This document shows positions 42,836 to 63,023 of a DNA stretch of 64,000 nucleotides, one piece after another. Location: the IMG/VR virus record IMGVR_UViG_3300050120_000152, positions 276,345-340,344 of that record; one strand, 5' to 3'. The translations under genes were made by a program, and so were the position numbers. How positions within the stretch are numbered: the first letter of the stretch is position 1; each line of letters starts with the position of its first letter. Under the pieces are notes generated by a model. It saw only the letters and a program-made list of their open reading frames with translations. It had not been told where the DNA came from and made no database searches.

Positions 42836-43108
42836 ATGAAAAATAACATGAATAACGATTTTGAAGTAAAAATCATATCTGATAAGAAAATTAAAGTTTC
42901 TATTGAAGAGATTTTATCTATAAGAAAACGATGTAAAGAGATAAATTCTGTAAAACTTAATGATATTGAATTTACTTTTGATGGAAAAATTATTAATCCT
43001 TCATTAGAAGATATAGAGCATTGGTACTTTACCGGATTAAATAATATTGATTTTGTTAGATGTATATTAGAAGGGGAATATATTCCTTTACAAAATATAG
43101 ATGATTGA
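42836..43108 (+). CDS. Hypothetical protein
   Basis: 90-aa ORF between tRNA genes. Confidence 0.55.
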   Translation: MKNNMNNDFEVKIISDKKIKVSIEEILSIRKRCKEINSVKLNDIEFTFDGKIINPSLEDIEHWYFTGLNNIDFVRCILEGEYIPLQNIDD

Positions 43109-43186
43109 AATATAGTACGTGACCCGAGCATAGTAGCACACTGGTATGATAATGATAAATAGTTATTATCAGAGAGTAAATCTACT

Positions 43187-43798
43187 ATGTCACAGACTAA
43201 TAATTATAGAAATGTTAAAAATTATAGATTAAGAATAAAAGATATTGTTTTATTTTCTATGGGAAATAAATGTCAAATATGTAAGTATGATAAATGTAAA
43301 GCAGCATTAGAAATTCATCATGTTGACCCCACGACAAAAGAATATTCTATTAATGAAATTAAATCTTGGAGTAAGATGTGTGCAGAATTACCAAAATGTA
43401 TCTTATTATGTGCTAATTGTCACCGAGAAGTTCATCATAATGATTTAAAAATTCCTACCGAATATAATAGATTTGATCAAGAAAAAGCAAATGGTTTAAA
43501 AATTGAACAAGCAGAATTAGGTAGAATTATAAGCAATAAAGCGGTGATTAAATATAACAAACAGTTAGCCATCCAGAGAAAAATAGATTATCAAGAAAAA
43601 TTAAAACTTCTTAAAGAAGTTAGAACTAATATAATATTAAATTCTAACATAGATTTTACTAAATTTGGTTGGGGTGAGCAATTGGGAAAATGTTTTGGTA
43701 TAAGTAGACAAAAAGCGTCAGCATGGTTTAAAAAGCATTTACCAGATATGTATTATTCTAATAATATTAAGAAATTTCCACGAAAAACGGTTGTGTAG
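43187..43798 (+). CDS. HNH homing endonuclease
   Basis: CQICKY..LEIHHVDP..CILLCANCHREVH. Stop codon lies inside tRNA-Ile. Confidence 0.85.
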   Translation: MSQTNNYRNVKNYRLRIKDIVLFSMGNKCQICKYDKCKAALEIHHVDPTTKEYSINEIKSWSKMCAELPKCILLCANCHREVHHNDLKIPTEYNRFDQEKANGLKIEQAELGRIISNKAVIKYNKQLAIQRKIDYQEKLKLLKEVRTNIILNSNIDFTKFGWGEQLGKCFGISRQKASAWFKKHLPDMYYSNNIKKFPRKTVV

Positions 43799-43863
43799 CT
43801 CAGTGGTAGAGCGCAGTCCTGATAAGACTGTGGTCGAAGGTTCGATTCCTTCTACAACCACCA
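43789..43863 (+). tRNA. tRNA-Ile(GAT)
   Basis: Canonical cloverleaf, CAGTC-CTGATAA-GACTG, ACCA. Confidence 0.95.
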
Positions 43864-44022
43864 TTTTAAAATAAATATTTTTGATAATTTTATGTCAACA
43901 GAATCAGAAGAGCGTCAGCAAATTATAAATTTGCTAAAAGAATGTATCCAACACATGGATATTCTAAATCAACATCTTGCTAAACTTTATCCAATGGATG
44001 ATGGCGAGAATTAATAATTTAT

Positions 44023-44093
44023 GGGATGTTAGCTAAGTGGTAAAGCATGGGCAAATCGCCCCGAGGTCAATGGTTCGAATCCATTACATCCCC
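44023..44093 (+). ncRNA. tRNA-like gene lacking a valid anticodon loop
   Basis: GGGATGT/ACATCCC, TAGCTAAGTGGTAAAGC, GGTTCGAATCC. Anticodon arm is GGGC-AAATC-GCCC. No full CCA. Confidence 0.7.
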
Positions 44094-44110
44094 ATTACTT
44101 GAGAAATAAT

Positions 44111-44368
44111 ATGTCCTTATCGAAAGAAATAAAAGAGTCCTTATGGGACTTTTATGGTTGTGACAGTTTCAGTCGTTTACATGATTGTTTGATTGAATTT
44201 TACGATGATGTAACCGAAGATCATGTATATAAATTATTTTTAATGTTACCAGATTTTATTATTGGATTAGGCATTAGTTGGTCATTTAACGATACTGAAG
44301 TTGGTGATGCTGTTTATTCATTCATAGAAACTAATACCGAAATGGTAGATACATTATTTAAGGATTAA
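44111..44368 (+). CDS. Hypothetical protein
   Basis: ORF with GAG RBS. Confidence 0.55.
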   Translation: MSLSKEIKESLWDFYGCDSFSRLHDCLIEFYDDVTEDHVYKLFLMLPDFIIGLGISWSFNDTEVGDAVYSFIETNTEMVDTLFKD

Positions 44369-44403
44369 CATGTATTGGATTCTTCAAGATAACCTATTAC
44401 CGT

Positions 44404-44480
44404 GGAGCAATAGCTTAACTGGACAAAGTTTCTGATTCCTAATTGGAAAGATGTGAGTTCGAATCTCACTTGCCCCACCA
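44404..44480 (+). tRNA. tRNA-Arg(CCT)
   Basis: TCTGA-TTCCTAA-TTGGA, GTGAG-TTCGAAT-CTCAC, ACCA. Confidence 0.85.
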
Positions 44481-44530
44481 CTTGACATATCAACGATTCT
44501 GTATTAATCTCTTGTAAAGAGGATTAGATT

Positions 44531-44758
44531 ATGAATGAAGTTAGCGTAGGTATTACTGGCCCAGCAGGTTCAGGTAAGTCAACAATACTATCAATTATTC
44601 AAAAAGCATTATTGGATGCTGGATTTGCTAATGTTGTTATAAGTGATTCGGGTAATTCTATTGACTTGAATACTAGAATTACCACATTACAAAGCCATGG
44701 AACTAAGATTTGGTTAGGCACACATCAAACTATACGAACTCTTCATGGTGCTAATTAA
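44531..44758 (+). CDS. Small P-loop-containing protein
   Basis: GPAGSGKST. TTGACA promoter and AGAGG RBS upstream. Confidence 0.6.
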   Translation: MNEVSVGITGPAGSGKSTILSIIQKALLDAGFANVVISDSGNSIDLNTRITTLQSHGTKIWLGTHQTIRTLHGAN

Positions 44759-44996
44759 ACACATACTTGACAATATCATCACATTGTAGTAATGTATTGT
44801 TATTATGAATGAAGAAATCAGAAAGAAAGAAGCTGAAATTAAAAACCAACAACGATGTAATTTGAAATACAGTAAATCACGTTGGTATAATTCTGGAATA
44901 ACTACTCTTGAGCGGTTACAAAAAGAATTGGAAGAACTTAAAAAGTTATTTTTGAATGATAGTGAAGCTAAATAATTCAACAAGGGTTATTTAGCT

Positions 44997-45245
44997 ATGA
45001 TCAAAAAATTGTGGGGGTTCATAGTTGTTCATAACTATGTGAAGTGTGGACTCAGATATGGTATTGACCAAGAAAGTTCTTGGCAAGTTGGTGATTCCGA
45101 GAACAGATATTATATAAAAACTTTCGCATTCTGGTCTAAATTATATCATAAAATAGGATATAGATGTATATCTGATGATATTTGGGCATCATGTACTTAT
45201 GATATTTCCAGATATAAACCATTTTTCAAAATTAAACGTTTTTAA
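44997..45245 (+). CDS. Hypothetical protein
   Basis: 82-aa ORF. Confidence 0.45.
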   Translation: MIKKLWGFIVVHNYVKCGLRYGIDQESSWQVGDSENRYYIKTFAFWSKLYHKIGYRCISDDIWASCTYDISRYKPFFKIKRF

Positions 45246-45378
45246 TGGGACGTTAGTTCACGAGTCTAACATCTTAGTCCATATGAGTCCATATTGACCT
45301 AGAAATAATATTGTAATAAATTTGTGTTGGCATGCGGAAATATATAAATACCCGTATAATCTATCCAAATCCCCTACA

Positions 45379-46434
45379 ATGAAAAAAACCCTATTTATAC
45401 TTAAGAAGCGTAGTAATAATTATCAATCAGATTTGCCATCTATGACCGGCACACTATCATCTGGATTAATTAATTCAGTTAAATTCGTAGATAATATGTT
45501 GAATGACCATGGTATTGAATCCCACTTCGTAGAAGTAGATGACAATAACGATATCGACCGCGAAGTCACCAAGTACAAGCCAGATGTAGTCATCATCGAA
45601 GCTATTTGGGTTGTGCCTAATAAATTTGAGGTATTGCGTAAGCGTCACCCTAACGTTCAATGGATTATTAGAATTCACTCAGAAATACCATTTATCTCTG
45701 GTGAAGGTAATGCATTAGAATGGCTGTTTGGATATGTTGCATACGATAATGTTCTGATCGCAGCTAATACTGAAAGAATGGAACATGATTTGAAGCATAT
45801 GTTAGCAGCTAGTCATGGAGATGCACTTATTGAAAATAAAGTGATATATTTACCAAATTACTATAAAGAGAAGATCATACATCAGGATGCCGATAGAAAA
45901 ATTGCTTATAAAGATTTCTTGAATGTCGGTTGTTTTGGTGCTATACGACCATTAAAAAATCAATTGATTCAAGCAATGGCGGCAATTGAATATGCTAGAG
46001 AGAATAGTAGACGCTTGAGATTCCATATTAACGGCTCTCGTATAGAACAAGGCGGTAATGTATTAAAGAATATTAGAAATTTATTTGCTAATCTTGATAA
46101 TAAATTTTATGAGTTAGTGGAACATCCATGGTTAAACCATGAAGATTTCTTACAGTTAGTTAGTCATATGGATGTTGGTTTACAAGTTTCATTTTCTGAA
46201 ACGTTTAATATTGTAACGGCAGACTTTGTAAGTAGAGATGTGCCGGTTGTCGTGTCATCTGAGATAACATGGTTATCATCAATATCACATGCTAATACAA
46301 CGTCTATACCGTCGATTGCCAAAGCAATTAAATATTCTTTAGATAATAGAAAAGCTGTGACAGTATCGAATAAAGCTAAATTGAGAGAATTCAATCATGA
46401 TAGCGAACGTAGTTGGATTAAATATTTAGGTTAA
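45379..46434 (+). CDS. GT-B (GT4-like) glycosyltransferase
   Basis: FGAIRPLKNQ..DVGLQVSFSETFNIVTADFVSRDVPVVVS. TATAAATA at 45343. Confidence 0.75.
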   Translation: MKKTLFILKKRSNNYQSDLPSMTGTLSSGLINSVKFVDNMLNDHGIESHFVEVDDNNDIDREVTKYKPDVVIIEAIWVVPNKFEVLRKRHPNVQWIIRIHSEIPFISGEGNALEWLFGYVAYDNVLIAANTERMEHDLKHMLAASHGDALIENKVIYLPNYYKEKIIHQDADRKIAYKDFLNVGCFGAIRPLKNQLIQAMAAIEYARENSRRLRFHINGSRIEQGGNVLKNIRNLFANLDNKFYELVEHPWLNHEDFLQLVSHMDVGLQVSFSETFNIVTADFVSRDVPVVVSSEITWLSSISHANTTSIPSIAKAIKYSLDNRKAVTVSNKAKLREFNHDSERSWIKYLG

Positions 46435-46441
46435 GAAATAC

Positions 46442-46516
46442 GCACCCTTAGTTCAGTGGTAGAATGCTTCTCTGACTTAGAAGAGGTCGAAGGTTCGATT
46501 CCTTCATGGTGTACCA
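46442..46516 (+). tRNA. tRNA-Val(GAC)
   Basis: CTTCT-CTGACTT-AGAAG arm (pyrimidine at 37), TTCGATT loop, ACCA. Confidence 0.85.
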
Positions 46517-46534
46517 AATTAGTTAAATAAATAA

Positions 46535-46804
46535 ATGATAAACAACAGTTATAAAAAGCTTGACTTTGATGGTGAAATTGATTTAACATATCTAAATGGT
46601 AAGGTTAAAGGATTTTCCGATGAAAAGGGTAATAGTAAATTTTATACTAGAGCCGTAGGATTCGTTGATGATCTTGAACATGCAAAATTATTGATATCAG
46701 AATTAGTTGATGATAAAACAATTATTTGTTATGCTTACCTGACAAATGGATCAGATAATATGGAAGAAAAATCATTTTTGACGATTCGATCTAATATTAA
46801 GTAA
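46535..46804 (+). CDS. Hypothetical protein
   Basis: 89-aa ORF. Confidence 0.45.
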   Translation: MINNSYKKLDFDGEIDLTYLNGKVKGFSDEKGNSKFYTRAVGFVDDLEHAKLLISELVDDKTIICYAYLTNGSDNMEEKSFLTIRSNIK

Positions 46805-46852
46805 TTGATTTTCTTATTATAATAAATATAATTATAATAGGATTCGTTTCAC

Positions 46853-47314
46853 ATGGATAGTGAAGTAAAAAATATACCGGATGATTATAGCAACCATCCA
46901 TTAGTACAAAATGCTACTGATGTTCATTATAATGAAATGTCAAAAGTGGAAAAAATATGTGCGTGGGTTTGTGACGAAATTGGATCACCCTTTGCATTAT
47001 TTGCTATTATTGTTATACAGGTATTATGGGTTGTATTAGGACAAACAAGTAATCTTGATCCATATCCATATGTGTTTCTATTAACAATTTCTAATGTTAT
47101 TCAATTGATTTTAATATTTATTTTAGCGGTAGGCCAGCGTCAATCGGTACAGCGATCAGAAATCCGATCACAAACTGATCATGATTCTATATCAAGAATA
47201 ATGCATCATCAAGATTTACAGGAAAAAATACTATTGCAAATTTTACAACATCATGATATAAATAGTGACGAAGTAAAAAATGTATTAGCTGCACTAAATA
47301 TTTCATCGGATTGA
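46853..47314 (+). CDS. DUF1003-like membrane protein
   Basis: GSPFALF..W..LDPYPYVFLL..ILAVGQ with two hydrophobic helices. Confidence 0.75.
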   Translation: MDSEVKNIPDDYSNHPLVQNATDVHYNEMSKVEKICAWVCDEIGSPFALFAIIVIQVLWVVLGQTSNLDPYPYVFLLTISNVIQLILIFILAVGQRQSVQRSEIRSQTDHDSISRIMHHQDLQEKILLQILQHHDINSDEVKNVLAALNISSD

Positions 47315-47356
47315 ACTGACGATAAATACCTACATAACTAGTAGGTTTATTGTTCA

Positions 47357-47998
47357 ATGAGATATAATAATGAAGAAGAGAAATCGAAAGCAATAAAGTT
47401 AAGAACTGAAAATTTTTTGTCTTTATCACAAATCAGTAAAGAGGTAGGATTGTCTGTCGCAACCTTATCCGTTCTATTAAGAGCTTATCCTTTAACTAAA
47501 CAGCGAATAAATGAATTAAAATTGCCTGCGCAAAAATTAGCTGCTAAAGCCAATAAAGATAAGTCAATACTGAGAAAAAATAAATTTAAAAATGAAGGTA
47601 TGGTTTTAGTAAATGAAGACCCTCTTTTTAGAGATTTATGTTTTCTGTATTGGGGTGAAGGTACAAAATTTAAATCCAATACAAGATTTTCTATATGTAA
47701 TTGTGATCCATACATGGTAAAATATATTTACAAAGTTATTTTTCATTTGGGATATATAAATAGTATGGTAACTACTGCCTATTGTTATACTGATTCAAAT
47801 AATACTGAGATAATTAATTATTGGAATGATTTTATTCAATCCCCAATAAATATTTATAAAGTTAAAAATTCTATTGCTAGTAAATTATTAAATACACATA
47901 AGCAACCTTATGGAACTTTACGTATTGATGTTAACTCTGTAGAATTGTATAATAAAGTTTTAGGTGGTATAGAAGCAATAAAGATTTTGGCCGGTTAG
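47357..47998 (+). CDS. Putative HTH plus LAGLIDADG-like endonuclease
   Basis: N-terminal HTH, LYWGEGTK..NCDP..YGTLRI. Late promoter hairpin upstream. Stop lies inside tRNA-Val. Confidence 0.6.
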   Translation: MRYNNEEEKSKAIKLRTENFLSLSQISKEVGLSVATLSVLLRAYPLTKQRINELKLPAQKLAAKANKDKSILRKNKFKNEGMVLVNEDPLFRDLCFLYWGEGTKFKSNTRFSICNCDPYMVKYIYKVIFHLGYINSMVTTAYCYTDSNNTEIINYWNDFIQSPINIYKVKNSIASKLLNTHKQPYGTLRIDVNSVELYNKVLGGIEAIKILAG

Positions 47999-48063
47999 CT
48001 CAGCGGTAGAGCAGGACGTTTACACCGTTCAGGTCGCGGGTTCGACTCCCTCACCGGCTACCA
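47989..48063 (+). tRNA. tRNA-Val(TAC)
   Basis: GGACG-TTTACAC-CGTTC, TTCGACT loop, ACCA. Confidence 0.9.
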
Positions 48064-48065
48064 AG

Positions 48066-48273
48066 TTTTACAGCGTCCACTGTAAAAGGTTCATATCTTT
48101 CCTTAAAGATAGGCTGACCATAATCAGACGCGAAGTATGGGGGTGCCACTGCTACCACAATTGATAAGTGTAGTGGGTCAGTCAGAAGATCACATTCTGA
48201 ATTTCCTCATCAATGATATAAATTTGATGCTCTAATTAGCTGCTGGTGTTGCAATTAGAGTAGGATACCAGCA
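48066..48273 (+). ncRNA. Unassigned structured RNA candidate
   Basis: Several helices and loop-loop complementarities between tRNA genes, with no credible ORF. Confidence 0.5.
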
Positions 48274-48572: not shown

Positions 48573-48577
48573 TTTTA

Positions 48578-48597
48578 AGCCCCTTTCGGGGCTTTTT
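48578..48597 (+). terminator. Intrinsic terminator closing the tRNA array
   Basis: AAGCCCC-TTTC-GGGGCTTTTT. Confidence 0.85.
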
Positions 48598-61170: not shown

Positions 61171-61253
61171 GCTAGGTTGGCTGAGCGGTCGAAAGCACCT
61201 GTTTTGTAATCAGGTATACAACATCGTAGGTTCGAATCCTATGCCTAGCACCA
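61171..61253 (+). tRNA. tRNA-Thr(TGT), enlarged variable loop
   Basis: GCTAGGT/GCCTAGC, loop TTTGTAA, 11-nt variable region, ACCA. Confidence 0.85.
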
Positions 61254-61314
61254 CATTGGTTCAGTTCATAAACACAGCACCATTTATTGTATAAATAAAA
61301 TGAATGGTGCTTAT

Positions 61315-62031
61315 ATGAATATTGAAGATAAAAAGAAAAAGATTGTAAATGAAATAAATGATTTTATAAAAGTGTACCAAAGGTATCCTTCTAAAAATGA
61401 ATATAATAATAGAGATGATTTACCCCACCAAAATACAGTATTAAGAATTATTGGAACTCATTCTGAATACCAATCAAAGGGTATTATTAACCCTAGCCCC
61501 AACCCTATACCTAAACCATCTCACTATTGCATAGCATGTGGAATAGAATTATTAAATAATAGTAATAAATTTTGTAATCGTTCATGTGCGGCATCATTCA
61601 ATAATAAAAAGCGTGACATGGCTTGTAATACTAGGGGTACATGTAAACAATGTTTTGCTACCTTAAGAAATCGTGCTGGTAAATGGTATTGTAGTAAATC
61701 ATGTCATCATGAATATAGATTCTTAGAATTAATAGATAATTGGATAATAGATGGTAATACCACTGGTGATCCTATCACATTAAAAAAGATGATAACCAGA
61801 TTACATGGATATAGCTGTGCTAACGCTACCTGCCAATTATCGGATTGGGATGGTAAATCTATTGTTTTACAATTGGAGCATAAAGATGGTAACAGTGAAA
61901 ATAATAGTGTAACAAATTTATGTTTATTATGTCCTAATTGTCATAGTCAAACATCAACATTTACAGGTAAAAATAGAGGTAATGGTAGACACGTTCGTCG
62001 TCAACGTTATAAAGATGGCAAAAGTTACTAA
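61315..62031 (+). CDS. HNH homing endonuclease with Cys-rich N-terminal modules
   Basis: LQLEHKDGNSENNSVTNLCLLCPNCHSQT. Start probably 61315 (GGTG RBS, TATAAATA at 61290). Confidence 0.88.
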   Translation: MNIEDKKKKIVNEINDFIKVYQRYPSKNEYNNRDDLPHQNTVLRIIGTHSEYQSKGIINPSPNPIPKPSHYCIACGIELLNNSNKFCNRSCAASFNNKKRDMACNTRGTCKQCFATLRNRAGKWYCSKSCHHEYRFLELIDNWIIDGNTTGDPITLKKMITRLHGYSCANATCQLSDWDGKSIVLQLEHKDGNSENNSVTNLCLLCPNCHSQTSTFTGKNRGNGRHVRRQRYKDGKSY

Positions 62032-62041
62032 ATAAAATTAT

Positions 62042-62124
62042 GCTGGATTGGCTGAAGGGTTGAAAGCGCCTGTTTCGTATACAGGAATACCACATTGCAG
62101 GTTCGAATCCTGTGTCCAGCACCA
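62042..62124 (+). tRNA. tRNA-Thr(CGT), enlarged variable loop
   Basis: GCTGGAT/GTCCAGC, CCTGT-TTCGTAT-ACAGG, 11-nt variable region, ACCA. Confidence 0.85.
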
Positions 62125-62291: not shown

Positions 62292-63023
62292 ATGACAAAA
62301 CCTAAAGACAAAAAAGTATTCAATTTAGAATTACCTGATAATTTATCAAAAGATCAATTGAATGACTTGCTTTCCGAAGTGAAAGCCAAAATAAAAGAAA
62401 AAAGTTTATCAAGCACTGACATTCATATCACTTGTATATTAGATATTTCTGGATCAATGAGTTCTATCAGAGACGATTCCATAGGTGGCTTCAATACCTT
62501 CATTCAGGAACAGAAAGAATCAAAAGATGGTGACGCATTTTTAACTGTTCATTTATTTGATGATAAATTTGAAACTTTATATGAAAATGTTCCTATTGCA
62601 AATGTTAAACCATTAACCAGAGATGATTTTGTTCCTCGTGGTAGTACAGCATTAACAGATGCATTGGGCAAGACATTAATGCAGTTATTAAAGACCGATA
62701 ATAAAAATAATATTATTGTTATTCTTACTGATGGTGGCGAAAATTCTTCAAAAACTTTTACTACACATGATGTTAAGAAATTAACCATGCGATGCGAAGA
62801 AAAGAATTGGCAGTTTGTCTATTTGGGTGCAAATCAAGATTCATTTGGTGTTACACAGCATTATGGTATGTTAGGCGCACATACAGCAAATTATGTTGCA
62901 GATAGTGCGGGTACTAGAACAGCGTATGCATCAGCTTCAAATTATACAAAAATGACACGATCCAAGATGGCAGCAACGGATACTTCAGCAGGAATGTCAG
63001 ACAAAACAGCGAAAGCGTCGTAA
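62292..63023 (+). CDS. vWA domain protein
   Basis: ILDISGSM, PRGSTALTDA, ILTDGGENSS and YLGAN motifs. Confidence 0.88.
   Translation: MTKPKDKKVFNLELPDNLSKDQLNDLLSEVKAKIKEKSLSSTDIHITCILDISGSMSSIRDDSIGGFNTFIQEQKESKDGDAFLTVHLFDDKFETLYENVPIANVKPLTRDDFVPRGSTALTDALGKTLMQLLKTDNKNNIIVILTDGGENSSKTFTTHDVKKLTMRCEEKNWQFVYLGANQDSFGVTQHYGMLGAHTANYVADSAGTRTAYASASNYTKMTRSKMAATDTSAGMSDKTAKAS

What the first reader, a model, noticed from the sequence alone, without database searches (positions are those of the whole stretch)
43187..48063. Two unrelated endonuclease ORFs borrow their stop codon from tRNA positions 8-10
The HNH gene ends at TAG 43796-98 inside tRNA-Ile (43789-). The LAGLIDADG-like gene ends at TAG 47996-98 inside tRNA-Val (47989-). 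In both, the stop is the conserved U8-A9-G10. RNase P maturation of the tRNA would cut the stop codon off the mRNA, giving non-stop mRNA and a built-in limiter of a toxic nuclease. The overlap also ties each nuclease gene to its tRNA. T4 SegB is the precedent for tRNA-region homing.
Basis: partly seen in the sequence, partly recalled or inferred. Interest (0 to 1): 0.6.

Follow-up and report, generated by a model that had tools for sequence, protein, structure and literature searches.

The report
Homing nuclease genes ending inside tRNAs
Two selfish nuclease genes in a 340-kb phage from peat are packed so tightly against tRNA genes that each uses the tRNA's conserved U8-A9-G10 as its stop codon; this recurs in many phages and looks mainly like a by-product of packing, with a possible and already-proposed side effect on nuclease dosage.

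Summary
ORF 43187-43798 is an HNH endonuclease gene and ends at TAG 43796-98, which is positions 8-10 of tRNA-Ile(GAU). ORF 47357-47998 has an HTH domain plus a LAGLIDADG-like domain and ends at TAG 47996-98, positions 8-10 of tRNA-Val(UAC).

Both belong to families that live almost only in phage tRNA arrays.
- At least 8 nuclease genes abut tRNAs in this genome.
- In 65 unique IMG/VR loci of the HNH family, 17 ORFs run into a same-strand tRNA. Nine of these stop at positions 8-10, against 17-33% expected by chance.
- Close relatives differ at the junction. Some keep their own stop 1-13 nt upstream. Others stop at tRNA positions 2, 4, 6, 15, 21, 26 or 49, or overlap an opposite-strand tRNA.

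So U8-A9-G10 works as a default stop for cassettes squeezed between tRNA genes, which are probably their homing targets.

Loss of the stop codon on RNase P cleavage follows from the geometry but is untested: no RNA data exist. The same idea was published for T4 SegB and the T5 F-Tfl enzymes in 2008.

Verdict: real and recurrent, moderately interesting, a variant of a known kind.

The parts
43187..43798 (+). HNH homing-endonuclease gene (203 aa). HNH/zinc core at about residues 24-90, C-terminal HTH-like tail. Its last 10 nt are tRNA-Ile positions 1-10.
   Evidence: ORF list; sequence; PHROG HNH 1.5e-24; invariant C29, C32, H44, H45, N77, C78 and H79 in alignment A3; relatives in tRNA arrays
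43789..43863 (+). tRNA-Ile(GAU), overlapped at its 5' end by the HNH ORF
   Evidence: ARAGORN; Rfam RF00005 73.1 bits, model 1-71
43796..43798 (+). TAG serving as the HNH stop codon and as tRNA-Ile U8-A9-G10
47318..47354 (+). RNA hairpin ending 3 nt before the ORF2 start codon. It covers the purine-rich putative ribosome-binding site, and could also act as the terminator of the upstream DUF1003 gene.
   Evidence: strand folding -11.9 kcal/mol, z -3.48, 0 of 200 shuffles as stable; terminator-like scan
47357..47998 (+). Gene of the uncharacterised 'YWGEGTK' family (213 aa): N-terminal HTH (about 1-45), long helix, and a C-terminal LAGLIDADG-like domain (86-213). Its last 10 nt are tRNA-Val positions 1-10.
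   Evidence: homologs and alignments; AF2 models with pLDDT 82 and 88; VIA-align best hits I-DmoI at Z 7.1 and 6.9 plus other LAGLIDADG chains; homodimer model ipSAE 0.56 against best control 0.00
47989..48063 (+). tRNA-Val(UAC), overlapped at its 5' end by ORF2
   Evidence: ARAGORN; Rfam 59.3 bits
47996..47998 (+). TAG serving as the ORF2 stop codon and as tRNA-Val U8-A9-G10
48577..48594 (+). Strong intrinsic-terminator-like hairpin after tRNA-Gln, the first on the + strand downstream of ORF2 and tRNA-Val. This fits ORF2 and the following tRNAs lying on one transcript.
61300..62031 (+). Third nuclease gene of the window (HNH, a different PHROG family), lying between tRNA-Thr(UGU) 61171-61253 and tRNA-Thr(CGU) 62042-62124. 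It has its own stop 10 nt before the tRNA.
   Evidence: PHROG 6.4e-22

Best explanation
Both ORFs are free-standing homing-endonuclease genes that colonise the spacers of phage tRNA arrays. One is an HNH enzyme of a lineage tied to tRNA-Ile(GAU) and tRNA-Asn(GUU). The other belongs to an undescribed HTH + LAGLIDADG-like family often found beside tRNA-Val(UAC). Most likely the tRNA genes are their cleavage targets and also supply the conserved homology arms for copying the cassette into other phages, as shown for T4 SegB (inferred here). The cassettes fill the whole spacer. When the ORF's own 3' end is lost or pushed against the next tRNA, translation runs on to the first in-frame stop in the tRNA. 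The nearly universal U8-A9-G10 (UAG) is the first such triplet and the commonest one, adding only two or three junk residues; the other two frames run a median of about 30 nt into the tRNA. So the shared 8-10 stop is a recurrent default outcome of tight packing, not a device specific to these two genes. One consequence follows from the geometry but is not shown: if ORF and tRNA are co-transcribed, RNase P cleavage at tRNA +1 leaves an mRNA without a stop codon. Only unprocessed precursors could then give normally terminated nuclease. Processed ones would go to tmRNA rescue, and this phage encodes a tmRNA itself. A translating ribosome would also unfold the acceptor and D stems.
For: - Geometry and identities.
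- The HNH family sits in tRNA arrays in very different phages: Lak megaphages, a 735-kb phage, Sinorhizobium phiM7/M12 and Yersinia fHe-Yen9-04.
- 75 of 80 IMG/VR loci have tRNAs within 2 kb. 58 of 69 distinct proteins have a tRNA within about 150 nt. 34 flank tRNA-Asn(GTT) and 11 flank tRNA-Ile(GAT).
- The closest relative (71% identity) lies between two tRNA-Ile(GAT) genes.
- Ten of the eleven ORF2-family loci have a tRNA within about 100 nt of the gene (L016 only has one about 930 nt away). Four lie just downstream of tRNA-Val(TAC), and the window and L010 lie upstream of it.
- Junction survey: 17 unique same-strand overlaps, 9 at positions 8-10 and 16 of 17 within 26 nt; 10 more with gaps of 1-13 nt.
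- Null model: 8-10 is the modal first stop (16.7%) and the median end position is 30.
- The junction changes quickly: members of clades with 96-100% support differ in state.
- Other nuclease families do the same. A GIY-YIG gene (phrog_314, 1.6e-36) ends 15 nt into tRNA-Glu in L015, and another HNH (phrog_6050, 6.6e-28) ends at positions 9-11 of tRNA-Ser in L060.
- This genome has at least 8 nuclease genes abutting tRNAs, in both orientations.
- The C-terminal tails are not conserved. The ORF2 family's conserved core ends at '...IEAIK', and only 'ILAG' follows in the window.
- There is no terminator between the ORFs and their tRNAs; the first strong one follows tRNA-Gln.
- Permuted tmRNA RF04321, 88.9 bits.
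Against: - No closely related phage lacking either gene was found, so presence/absence polymorphism and a target site are not shown for these two genes.
- No nuclease activity has been tested.
- 9 of 17 at positions 8-10 is above the 1/3 expected for random frames (binomial P about 0.08; 0.04 if the window is counted). Some selection for this exact arrangement, or against longer read-in, is therefore not excluded.
- The tree backbone is weak (34 of 66 inner branches unresolved; quick search only).
- The LAGLIDADG assignment rests on middling Z scores (6.9-7.1) with no sequence-family hit.
Confidence: 0.6

Rival explanations
1. One reading: the stop-in-tRNA overlap is a selected regulatory device. 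RNase P maturation removes the stop codon. The resulting non-stop mRNA is handled by tmRNA (host or phage), the nuclease is tagged and degraded, and a toxic enzyme is kept at low dose and coupled to tRNA expression.
For: - The RNase P site lies 7 nt upstream of both stops.
- There is no terminator between ORF and tRNA.
- The arrangement recurs at 8-10 in at least five separate places in the HNH tree and in unrelated nuclease families.
- 8-10 is over-represented relative to random frames.
- The phage carries its own permuted tmRNA with a tag ending in ...YSLAA.
- Precedents: the same idea for SegB and T5 F-Tfl (PMC2330249), and arfA, whose RNase III-made non-stop mRNA is repressed by trans-translation (PMC10107115).
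- ORF2 also has a hairpin over its putative ribosome-binding site, another known way of restraining T4 homing nucleases.
Against: - Close relatives switch freely between borrowed and own stops and between tRNA positions.
- Ten same-strand junctions keep their own stop.
- Both families also overlap opposite-strand tRNAs.
- The third HNH of the same window keeps its own stop 10 nt upstream.
- ORFs with no nuclease annotation also end at 8-10 (L033, L064, L088).
- There are no RNA data at all.
Confidence: 0.2
2. The two ORFs are decaying relics. Deletions removed their native 3' ends, and the borrowed stop merely marks truncated, inactive nuclease genes on their way to loss.
For: - The C-terminal tails are unconserved.
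- Several IMG/VR members of the '+10' class are short, HNH-core-only ORFs of 99-113 aa that end a few residues after the last motif histidine.
- Homing-endonuclease genes are known to cycle through decay (general knowledge).
Against: - The window's HNH aligns over residues 4-203 with the phiM7/M12 proteins and keeps all invariant motif residues.
- ORF2 keeps every conserved column up to I208, and its model folds with pLDDT 82-88.
- Neither ORF has an internal stop or frameshift.
Confidence: 0.12
3. The TAGs are not the real ends. The phage's own tRNA(CUA) suppresses TAG, so the proteins would be extended by 8 residues (HNH, to TGA 43820-22) or 29 residues (ORF2, to TAA 48083-85).
For: - A well-scoring tRNA with anticodon CUA exists (66 bits, genome 152454-152540, minus strand).
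- TAG is the rarest stop in this genome, ending 16 of 272 ORFs of 150 aa or more.
Against: - The genome shows no sign of TAG recoding. Reading TAG as sense barely raises coding coverage (0.858 to 0.884). No pair of long ORFs is separated by a single TAG, against 17 for TAA and 7 for TGA.
- The extensions would be tRNA-encoded junk.
Confidence: 0.05

Closest known systems
T4 SegB (GIY-YIG homing endonuclease in the T4 tRNA gene cluster; PMC2330249)
   Same: A free-standing nuclease gene lies between tRNA genes on the same strand and the same precursor transcript. The enzyme cuts inside tRNA genes of segB-less relatives. The authors already proposed that tRNA-Arg maturation severs the mRNA between the last sense codon and the stop codon and so lowers expression, and that a hairpin covers the translation start.
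   Different: It is a different nuclease family. In the T4 record the TAA lies 5 nt upstream of tRNA-Arg, not inside it. In the window the stop lies inside the mature tRNA, so RNase P cleavage at +1 would necessarily remove it. Activity and homing were shown for SegB and have not been tested here.
T5 F-TflI, F-TflII, F-TflIV (HNH endonucleases in the T5 tRNA gene region; Akulenko et al. 2004, as cited in PMC2330249)
   Same: They are HNH nuclease genes inside a phage tRNA cluster. Lowering of their expression by precursor processing has been suggested.
   Different: I did not read the primary paper, and I did not check how these ORFs lie against their tRNAs. Many tblastn hits of the window's HNH fall in Escherichia and Salmonella phages, but I did not establish which phages these are.
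E. coli arfA (non-stop mRNA made by RNase III, repressed by tmRNA; PMC10107115)
   Same: An endonucleolytic cut upstream of the stop codon makes a non-stop mRNA whose product is held down by trans-translation. This is the mechanism the limiter reading needs.
   Different: The nuclease is RNase III acting at a hairpin, not RNase P at a tRNA; it is a cellular gene; and it has been shown experimentally.
Single-domain LAGLIDADG endonucleases and LAGLIDADG-fold proteins (I-DmoI, I-Tsp061I, I-MsoI, intein endonucleases, WhiA)
   Same: The ORF2 C-domain model matches them best: I-DmoI at Z 6.9-7.1, rmsd 2.5-2.7 A, 81 residues, 18-21% identity. Most chains with Z of 5 or more have the LAGLIDADG fold. 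The invariant 'LYWGEG' sits at the end of the first helix. The predicted homodimer packs these helices and brings E101 next to E101.
   Different: There is no hit to any Pfam or PHROG LAGLIDADG model, nor to PDB sequences. Foldseek finds nothing. The Z scores are in the range that can reflect a common arrangement. It carries an extra N-terminal HTH and a long helix.
Animal mitochondrial 'tRNA punctuation' (established knowledge; non-stop mRNAs in PMC9674279, seen only as title and abstract)
   Same: tRNA excision defines mRNA 3' ends, and coding sequences abut or overlap tRNAs.
   Different: There, polyadenylation completes the stop codons. Here, excision would remove a complete stop, and no completing mechanism is known in bacteria.

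Membership tests
HNH (beta-beta-alpha-Me) endonuclease - ORF 43187-43798 | Sequence match to HNH family models | tested here: met
   PHROG HNH families score 1.5e-24, 5.5e-24 and 1.1e-21. Pfam HNH and AI2M-like_HNH match only below their curated thresholds (E 0.03 and 0.0056).
HNH (beta-beta-alpha-Me) endonuclease - ORF 43187-43798 | Conserved Cys/His metal-binding residues and the catalytic His/Asn | tested here: met
   C29, C32, H44, H45, C75, N77, C78 and H79 are invariant, and H83 is nearly invariant, across 23 homologs (A3).
HNH (beta-beta-alpha-Me) endonuclease - ORF 43187-43798 | DNA cleavage activity | not testable with these tools
   Needs the purified protein.
Free-standing homing endonuclease gene (both ORFs) | Sporadic presence in otherwise syntenic, closely related genomes | tested here: inconclusive
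   No close relative of this phage was found. X2 and X3 hold only identical fragments. At family level the genes move between different tRNA spacers and different phages.
Free-standing homing endonuclease gene (both ORFs) | Cleavage site in the nuclease-free allele close to the insertion point | not testable with these tools
   Needs an enzyme assay on tRNA-array DNA from nuclease-free phages.
Free-standing homing endonuclease gene (both ORFs) | Insertion next to a conserved target gene | tested here: met
   58 of 69 distinct HNH relatives have a tRNA within about 150 nt, as do ten of the eleven ORF2-family loci (within about 100 nt).
LAGLIDADG endonuclease - ORF 47357-47998, residues 86-213 | Alpha-beta-beta-alpha-beta-beta-alpha core fold | tested here: met
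   AF2 domain model has pLDDT 88. Best VIA-align hits are I-DmoI Z 6.9, Tli intein endonuclease 6.4, WhiA 6.1, I-Tsp061I 5.7 and E-DreI 5.4. Only 8 of 48,161 chains reach Z 5. The Z values are middling and Foldseek finds nothing.
LAGLIDADG endonuclease - ORF 47357-47998, residues 86-213 | Motif helix ending in a conserved acidic residue (G-D/E-G) | tested here: inconclusive
   G100, E101 and G102 are invariant, and Y98 and W99 nearly so, at the end of helix 89-97. The offset of the I-DmoI alignment (model 86 to chain 5) puts E101 near the catalytic Asp. No residue-level structural alignment was available.
LAGLIDADG endonuclease - ORF 47357-47998, residues 86-213 | Sequence membership in LAGLIDADG_1/2/3 or related models | tested here: not met
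   No LAGLIDADG model was hit in Pfam or PHROGs at E of 0.1 or below. Profile searches against PDB sequences were also empty. I therefore describe it as LAGLIDADG-like rather than file it as a member.
LAGLIDADG endonuclease - ORF 47357-47998, residues 86-213 | Homodimer through the motif helices (single-domain enzymes) | tested here: met
   Complex prediction with 2 copies of residues 84-213: ipSAE 0.56 (runs 0.55-0.58), best of 3 controls 0.00. That mark was reached by 20 of 30 solved homodimers and 1 of 23 solved monomers. Runs agree in at least 95% of contacts and the partner's pLDDT is at least 83. The interface is residues 92-101, including E101 against E101. This is a model, not a measurement.
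Processing-made non-stop mRNA under tmRNA control (arfA-like; proposed for SegB) | ORF and cleavage site lie on one transcript | tested here: inconclusive
   There is no terminator between the ORFs and their tRNAs. Promoter-like sites are no more frequent than in shuffled sequence (44 against 39.7 +/- 6.2). No RNA runs exist.
Processing-made non-stop mRNA under tmRNA control (arfA-like; proposed for SegB) | Cleavage upstream of the stop codon and tmRNA tagging of the product | not testable with these tools
   The geometry predicts an RNase P cut 7 nt before each TAG. A tmRNA gene is present in the phage. Nothing has been measured.

The most novel reading that the evidence does not exclude
Use of U8-A9-G10 as the stop codon is a selected, widespread coupling device in phage tRNA arrays. 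Each precursor transcript would allow at most a few rounds of properly terminated nuclease synthesis before RNase P removes the stop. Later ribosomes would be rescued and their products tagged by tmRNA, including the phage's own. Ribosome transit would in turn delay folding of the downstream tRNA. Nuclease dose and tRNA supply would then be set by one shared 10-nt overlap.
Probability: 0.2. Interest if true: 0.7.

Novelty: new variant of a known kind. Interest (0 to 1): 0.42.

Why it matters
Homing nucleases in phage tRNA clusters are known, and so is the idea that tRNA processing restrains them. Three points go beyond that.
1. The arrangement is general. Several unrelated nuclease families in many uncultured phages end inside the next tRNA, most often at positions 8-10. 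This gives a simple, testable model of how selfish genes fit into tRNA arrays without destroying them.
2. It offers a clean natural system for asking whether RNase P-made non-stop mRNAs occur in bacteria and phages, and whether phage-encoded tmRNAs act on them.
3. It flags an unannotated HTH + LAGLIDADG-like family as a probable new group of homing enzymes associated with tRNA genes.

There is also a practical lesson for annotation. Gene callers that forbid CDS/tRNA overlap will truncate or miss such genes, and tRNA-array spacers are hotspots for nuclease genes.

Tried and rejected
- Close relatives of the phage, to find nuclease-free alleles. Megablast of 43000-48200 against 50,697 phage records gave no match.
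- Sequencing runs. All three listed runs are peat metagenomes and none is on record as RNA. Laying their contigs showed only identical low-depth fragments in X2 and X3, no nuclease-free variant and no joints of interest. Loose matches of other organisms' tRNAs to 43795-43890 were ignored.
- tblastn of ORF2 against phage records: no match.
- Foldseek against PDB with both models: nothing at E of 0.001 or below.
- Profile searches of A1 and A4 against PDB sequences: only chance hits, for example a 'YWGEG' string in a beta-lactamase-like protein.
- The ESM Atlas gave only unnamed or HTH-only clusters.
- TAG recoding was considered because of the tRNA(CUA) and rejected.
- tRNA mis-calls and assembly artefacts were considered and rejected.
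- A loose regular-expression scan for HNH motifs over the genome was uninformative. It was replaced by a list of ORFs abutting tRNAs plus PHROG and Pfam scans.
- The careful tree search did not finish within the time limit, so the quick tree was used.
- The large representative-protein search and the metagenome-contig scan were not run, because they were not needed for the verdict.
- Lak-phage relatives show no ORF of 60 aa or more under table 11 across the match. I did not read them under another genetic code.
- The search for homologous proteins sees only proteins of 0.55-1.75 times the query length, and the ORF2 domains were not searched separately with it.

Full report
**Setting.** The window is the last 64 kb of a single 340,344-bp contig. 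GC is about 33%. It carries a T4-like baseplate wedge, portal, helicase and SbcC-like genes, and comes from a peat metagenome. It is a jumbo phage with 39 ARAGORN tRNA calls. The standard genetic code fits. Stop-to-stop frames of 100 codons or more cover 86% of the genome. TAG is the rarest stop, ending 16 of 272 ORFs of 150 aa or more.

**The observation.** ARAGORN and Rfam agree on tRNA-Ile(GAT) at 43789-43863 (73.1 bits) and tRNA-Val(TAC) at 47989-48063 (59.3 bits).
- ORF 43187-43798 (203 aa) ends ...ACG GTT GVG-like codons GTG TAG in the sequence as read, that is ...ACG GTT GTG TAG.
- ORF 47357-47998 (213 aa) ends ...TTG GCC GGT TAG.
- In both, the TAG is tRNA positions 8-10.

These are the only two ORFs of 100 aa or more in the whole genome that run into a same-strand tRNA. 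A 229-nt contig from a different peat study is identical across the HNH/tRNA-Ile junction.

**What the two genes are.**

*ORF 1* is an HNH endonuclease. PHROG HNH families score 1.5e-24, and the Cys/His/Asn motif residues are invariant across 23 homologs.

*ORF 2* hits no nuclease family in Pfam or PHROGs. It defines a small family with an invariant 'LYWGEG.K' motif.
- AlphaFold models (pLDDT 82 for the whole protein, 88 for the C-domain) show an N-terminal HTH, a long helix and a C-terminal alpha/beta domain.
- The best structural neighbours of that domain are LAGLIDADG proteins: I-DmoI at Z 7.1 and 6.9 (rmsd 2.5-2.7 A over 81 residues), E-DreI, intein endonucleases, WhiA, I-Tsp061I and I-MsoI.
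- These Z values are middling, and Foldseek and sequence profiles find nothing.
- A homodimer model of residues 84-213 passes its controls: ipSAE 0.56 against a best control of 0.00. That mark was reached by 20 of 30 solved homodimers and 1 of 23 solved monomers. Runs agree in at least 95% of contacts, with pLDDT of at least 83.
- The interface is the motif helix (residues 92-101), with E101 facing E101, as in single-domain LAGLIDADG enzymes.

I therefore call it LAGLIDADG-like, not a family member.

**Both families live in tRNA arrays.** Relatives of the HNH lie among tRNAs in very different phages.
- In Lak megaphages and a 735-kb phage they lie between tRNA genes.
- In Sinorhizobium phiM7/M12 the gene lies between tRNAs on the opposite strand, and its 3' end overlaps one of them.
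- In Yersinia phage fHe-Yen9-04 the HNH ORF runs 24 nt into tRNA-Ser.

A profile scan of IMG/VR returned 80 loci, 75 of them with tRNAs within 2 kb. Of 69 distinct proteins, 58 have a tRNA within about 150 nt. Thirty-four flank tRNA-Asn(GTT) and 11 flank tRNA-Ile(GAT). The closest relative (71% identity) sits between two tRNA-Ile(GAT) genes.

Ten of the eleven ORF2-family loci have a tRNA within about 100 nt; L016 has its nearest one about 930 nt away.
- Four lie just downstream of tRNA-Val(TAC): L008, L009, L011 and L015.
- One lies upstream of tRNA-Ile and tRNA-Val(TAC): L010, with a 14-nt gap.
- One has a TAG whose G is position 1 of tRNA-Val(GAC): L012.
- Two have 3' ends running 45 and 36 nt into opposite-strand tRNAs: L013 and L014.

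The genome itself has at least eight nuclease genes (HNH, GIY-YIG and the LAGLIDADG-like one) abutting tRNAs in both orientations. They include a third one in the window at 61300-62031, between two tRNA-Thr genes, with its own stop 10 nt before the tRNA.

**Is the stop at 8-10 more than chance?**
- Among 65 unique HNH junctions, 17 ORFs overlap a same-strand downstream tRNA.
- Nine of these stop at positions 8-10. One of the nine is counted after correcting an ARAGORN start by one base.
- The others stop at positions ending at 2, 4, 6, 15, 21, 21, 26 and 49.
- Ten more keep their own stop 1-13 nt upstream.

For random frames reading into 500 distinct phage tRNAs, the first stop falls at 8-10 in 16.7% of cases. 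That is the mode. The median end is position 30. For tRNAs that carry a stop triplet at 8-10 the expectation is 1/3, and 9 of 17 against 1/3 gives P about 0.08. So 8-10 is the preferred landing place and short read-ins are favoured, but the excess is modest and the loci are related to one another.

On a quick tree, the '+10' state appears in at least five separate places. Strongly supported sister genes differ in state:
- L087 at +4 against L096 at +10.
- L079 at -62 against L091 at +10.
- L080 at +21 on tRNA-Thr against L085 at +10 on tRNA-Asn.
- L064 at +2, L083 at +21, L060 at -49 and L063 at -83, all within one clade with 99% support.

Other nuclease families do the same, and so do some unannotated ORFs.
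- A GIY-YIG gene ends 15 nt into tRNA-Glu.
- A different HNH ends at positions 9-11 of tRNA-Ser.
- The unannotated ORFs are those in L033, L064 and L088.

**Interpretation.** The simplest account is that these are homing-nuclease cassettes that target tRNA genes, use them as homology arms, and fill the spacers completely. When the ORF abuts the next tRNA, the universal U8-A9-G10 is the first available stop in one frame and costs only two or three extra residues. In the ORF2 family the conserved core ends at '...IEAIK', and only 'ILAG' follows in the window.

Loss of the stop codon on RNase P cleavage follows directly from the geometry, provided ORF and tRNA share a transcript. No terminator separates them, and the first strong one follows tRNA-Gln at 48577-48594. 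But no RNA data exist.

The idea is also not new. The SegB paper proposed that tRNA-Arg maturation cuts segB mRNA between the last sense codon and the stop, and proposed the same for T5 F-TflI/II/IV (PMC2330249). In the T4 record the segB TAA lies 5 nt upstream of tRNA-Arg, so the window shows a tighter version of that arrangement. arfA shows that processing-made non-stop mRNAs can be held down by tmRNA (PMC10107115).

Three things argue that the overlap itself is a by-product rather than the selected feature: the changeable junctions, the own-stop relatives and the antisense overlaps. The limiter effect may still be a real consequence.

**Extras that bear on the question.**
- The phage encodes a permuted tmRNA (RF04321, 88.9 bits; tag ending ...YSLAA).
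- It also encodes a tRNA with anticodon CUA (66 bits). There is no sign of TAG recoding.
- ORF2 is preceded by a stable hairpin covering its putative ribosome-binding site. This resembles the translational occlusion described for T4 homing nucleases.

**Verdict.** The best explanation is tight packing of homing cassettes that target tRNA genes, with U8-A9-G10 as the default stop. Novelty: a variant of a known kind. The undescribed LAGLIDADG-like family is a side finding.

Noticed in passing
outside the window: genome 89806-90109 (L097:507-810, + strand): The phage encodes a permuted (two-piece) tmRNA: Rfam RF04321, 88.9 bits against a gathering score of 47. ARAGORN reads the tag as ASNDAIYSMEYSLAA. 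This is relevant to any non-stop mRNA made in infected cells.
   Followed up: partly
outside the window: genome 152454-152540, minus strand (L098:455-541): A tRNA with anticodon CUA (amber suppressor type), about 87-90 nt long and so probably with a long variable arm; Rfam 66 bits. The genome shows no TAG recoding: no pair of long ORFs is separated by a single TAG, and TAG ends only 6% of long ORFs.
   Followed up: partly
window 61171-62124: A third nuclease gene (HNH, PHROG 14736/10822, 243 aa, 61300-62031) sits between tRNA-Thr(UGU) and tRNA-Thr(CGU). It has its own stop 10 nt before the second tRNA. ORF 62292-63023, just after that tRNA, matches phrog_7371 (unknown function, 1.6e-60).
   Followed up: partly
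outside the window: genome 3882-4574(-), 8581-9273(+), 126681-127325(+), 129815-130507(-), 164610-165161(-): Five more nuclease genes abut tRNA genes: three HNH genes lying tail to tail with tRNA-Ser, tRNA-Met and tRNA-Leu at 1-15 nt, and two SegE-like GIY-YIG genes just downstream of tRNA-Ala and tRNA-Gly. The tRNA neighbourhoods of this phage are heavily colonised.
   Followed up: partly
window 47318-47354: A stable hairpin (-11.9 kcal/mol, z -3.5) ends 3 nt before the ORF2 start codon and covers the putative ribosome-binding site. It may block translation, as in T4 homing nucleases, or terminate the upstream DUF1003 gene.
   Followed up: partly
window 44023-44093: The tRNA that ARAGORN calls Ile(AAT) is only 71 nt long. 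In the Rfam alignment its anticodon region is one base shorter than the model (8 positions against 9). Its decoding identity is unclear.
   Followed up: no
outside the window: genome 165789-165863, 117396-117492, 181716-181809, 126481-126568: Several odd ARAGORN tRNA calls: one with a two-base 'anticodon' and several unusually long ones (88-97 nt) that might carry introns or be mis-calls.
   Followed up: no
L001/L003 (Sinorhizobium phages phiM7 and phiM12), locus 1974-2096: The same stretch is annotated as a 123-nt tRNA-Thr in phiM7 and as a 77-nt pseudo 'tRNA-OTHER' in phiM12, while ARAGORN calls an 88-nt tRNA-Leu(CAA). The HNH ORF on the other strand ends inside it. The tRNA annotation there looks unreliable.
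   Followed up: no
window 46853-47314 and L010:6083-6517: A DUF1003 membrane-protein gene lies next to the ORF2-family gene both in the window and in the distant metagenome contig L010. This hints that these phages are remotely related or share a module.
   Followed up: no
L004, L005 (Lak phages): The HNH relatives in Lak phages show no ORF of 60 aa or more under table 11 across a 160-175-aa tblastn match, so they contain in-frame stops. I did not read them under another code.
   Followed up: no
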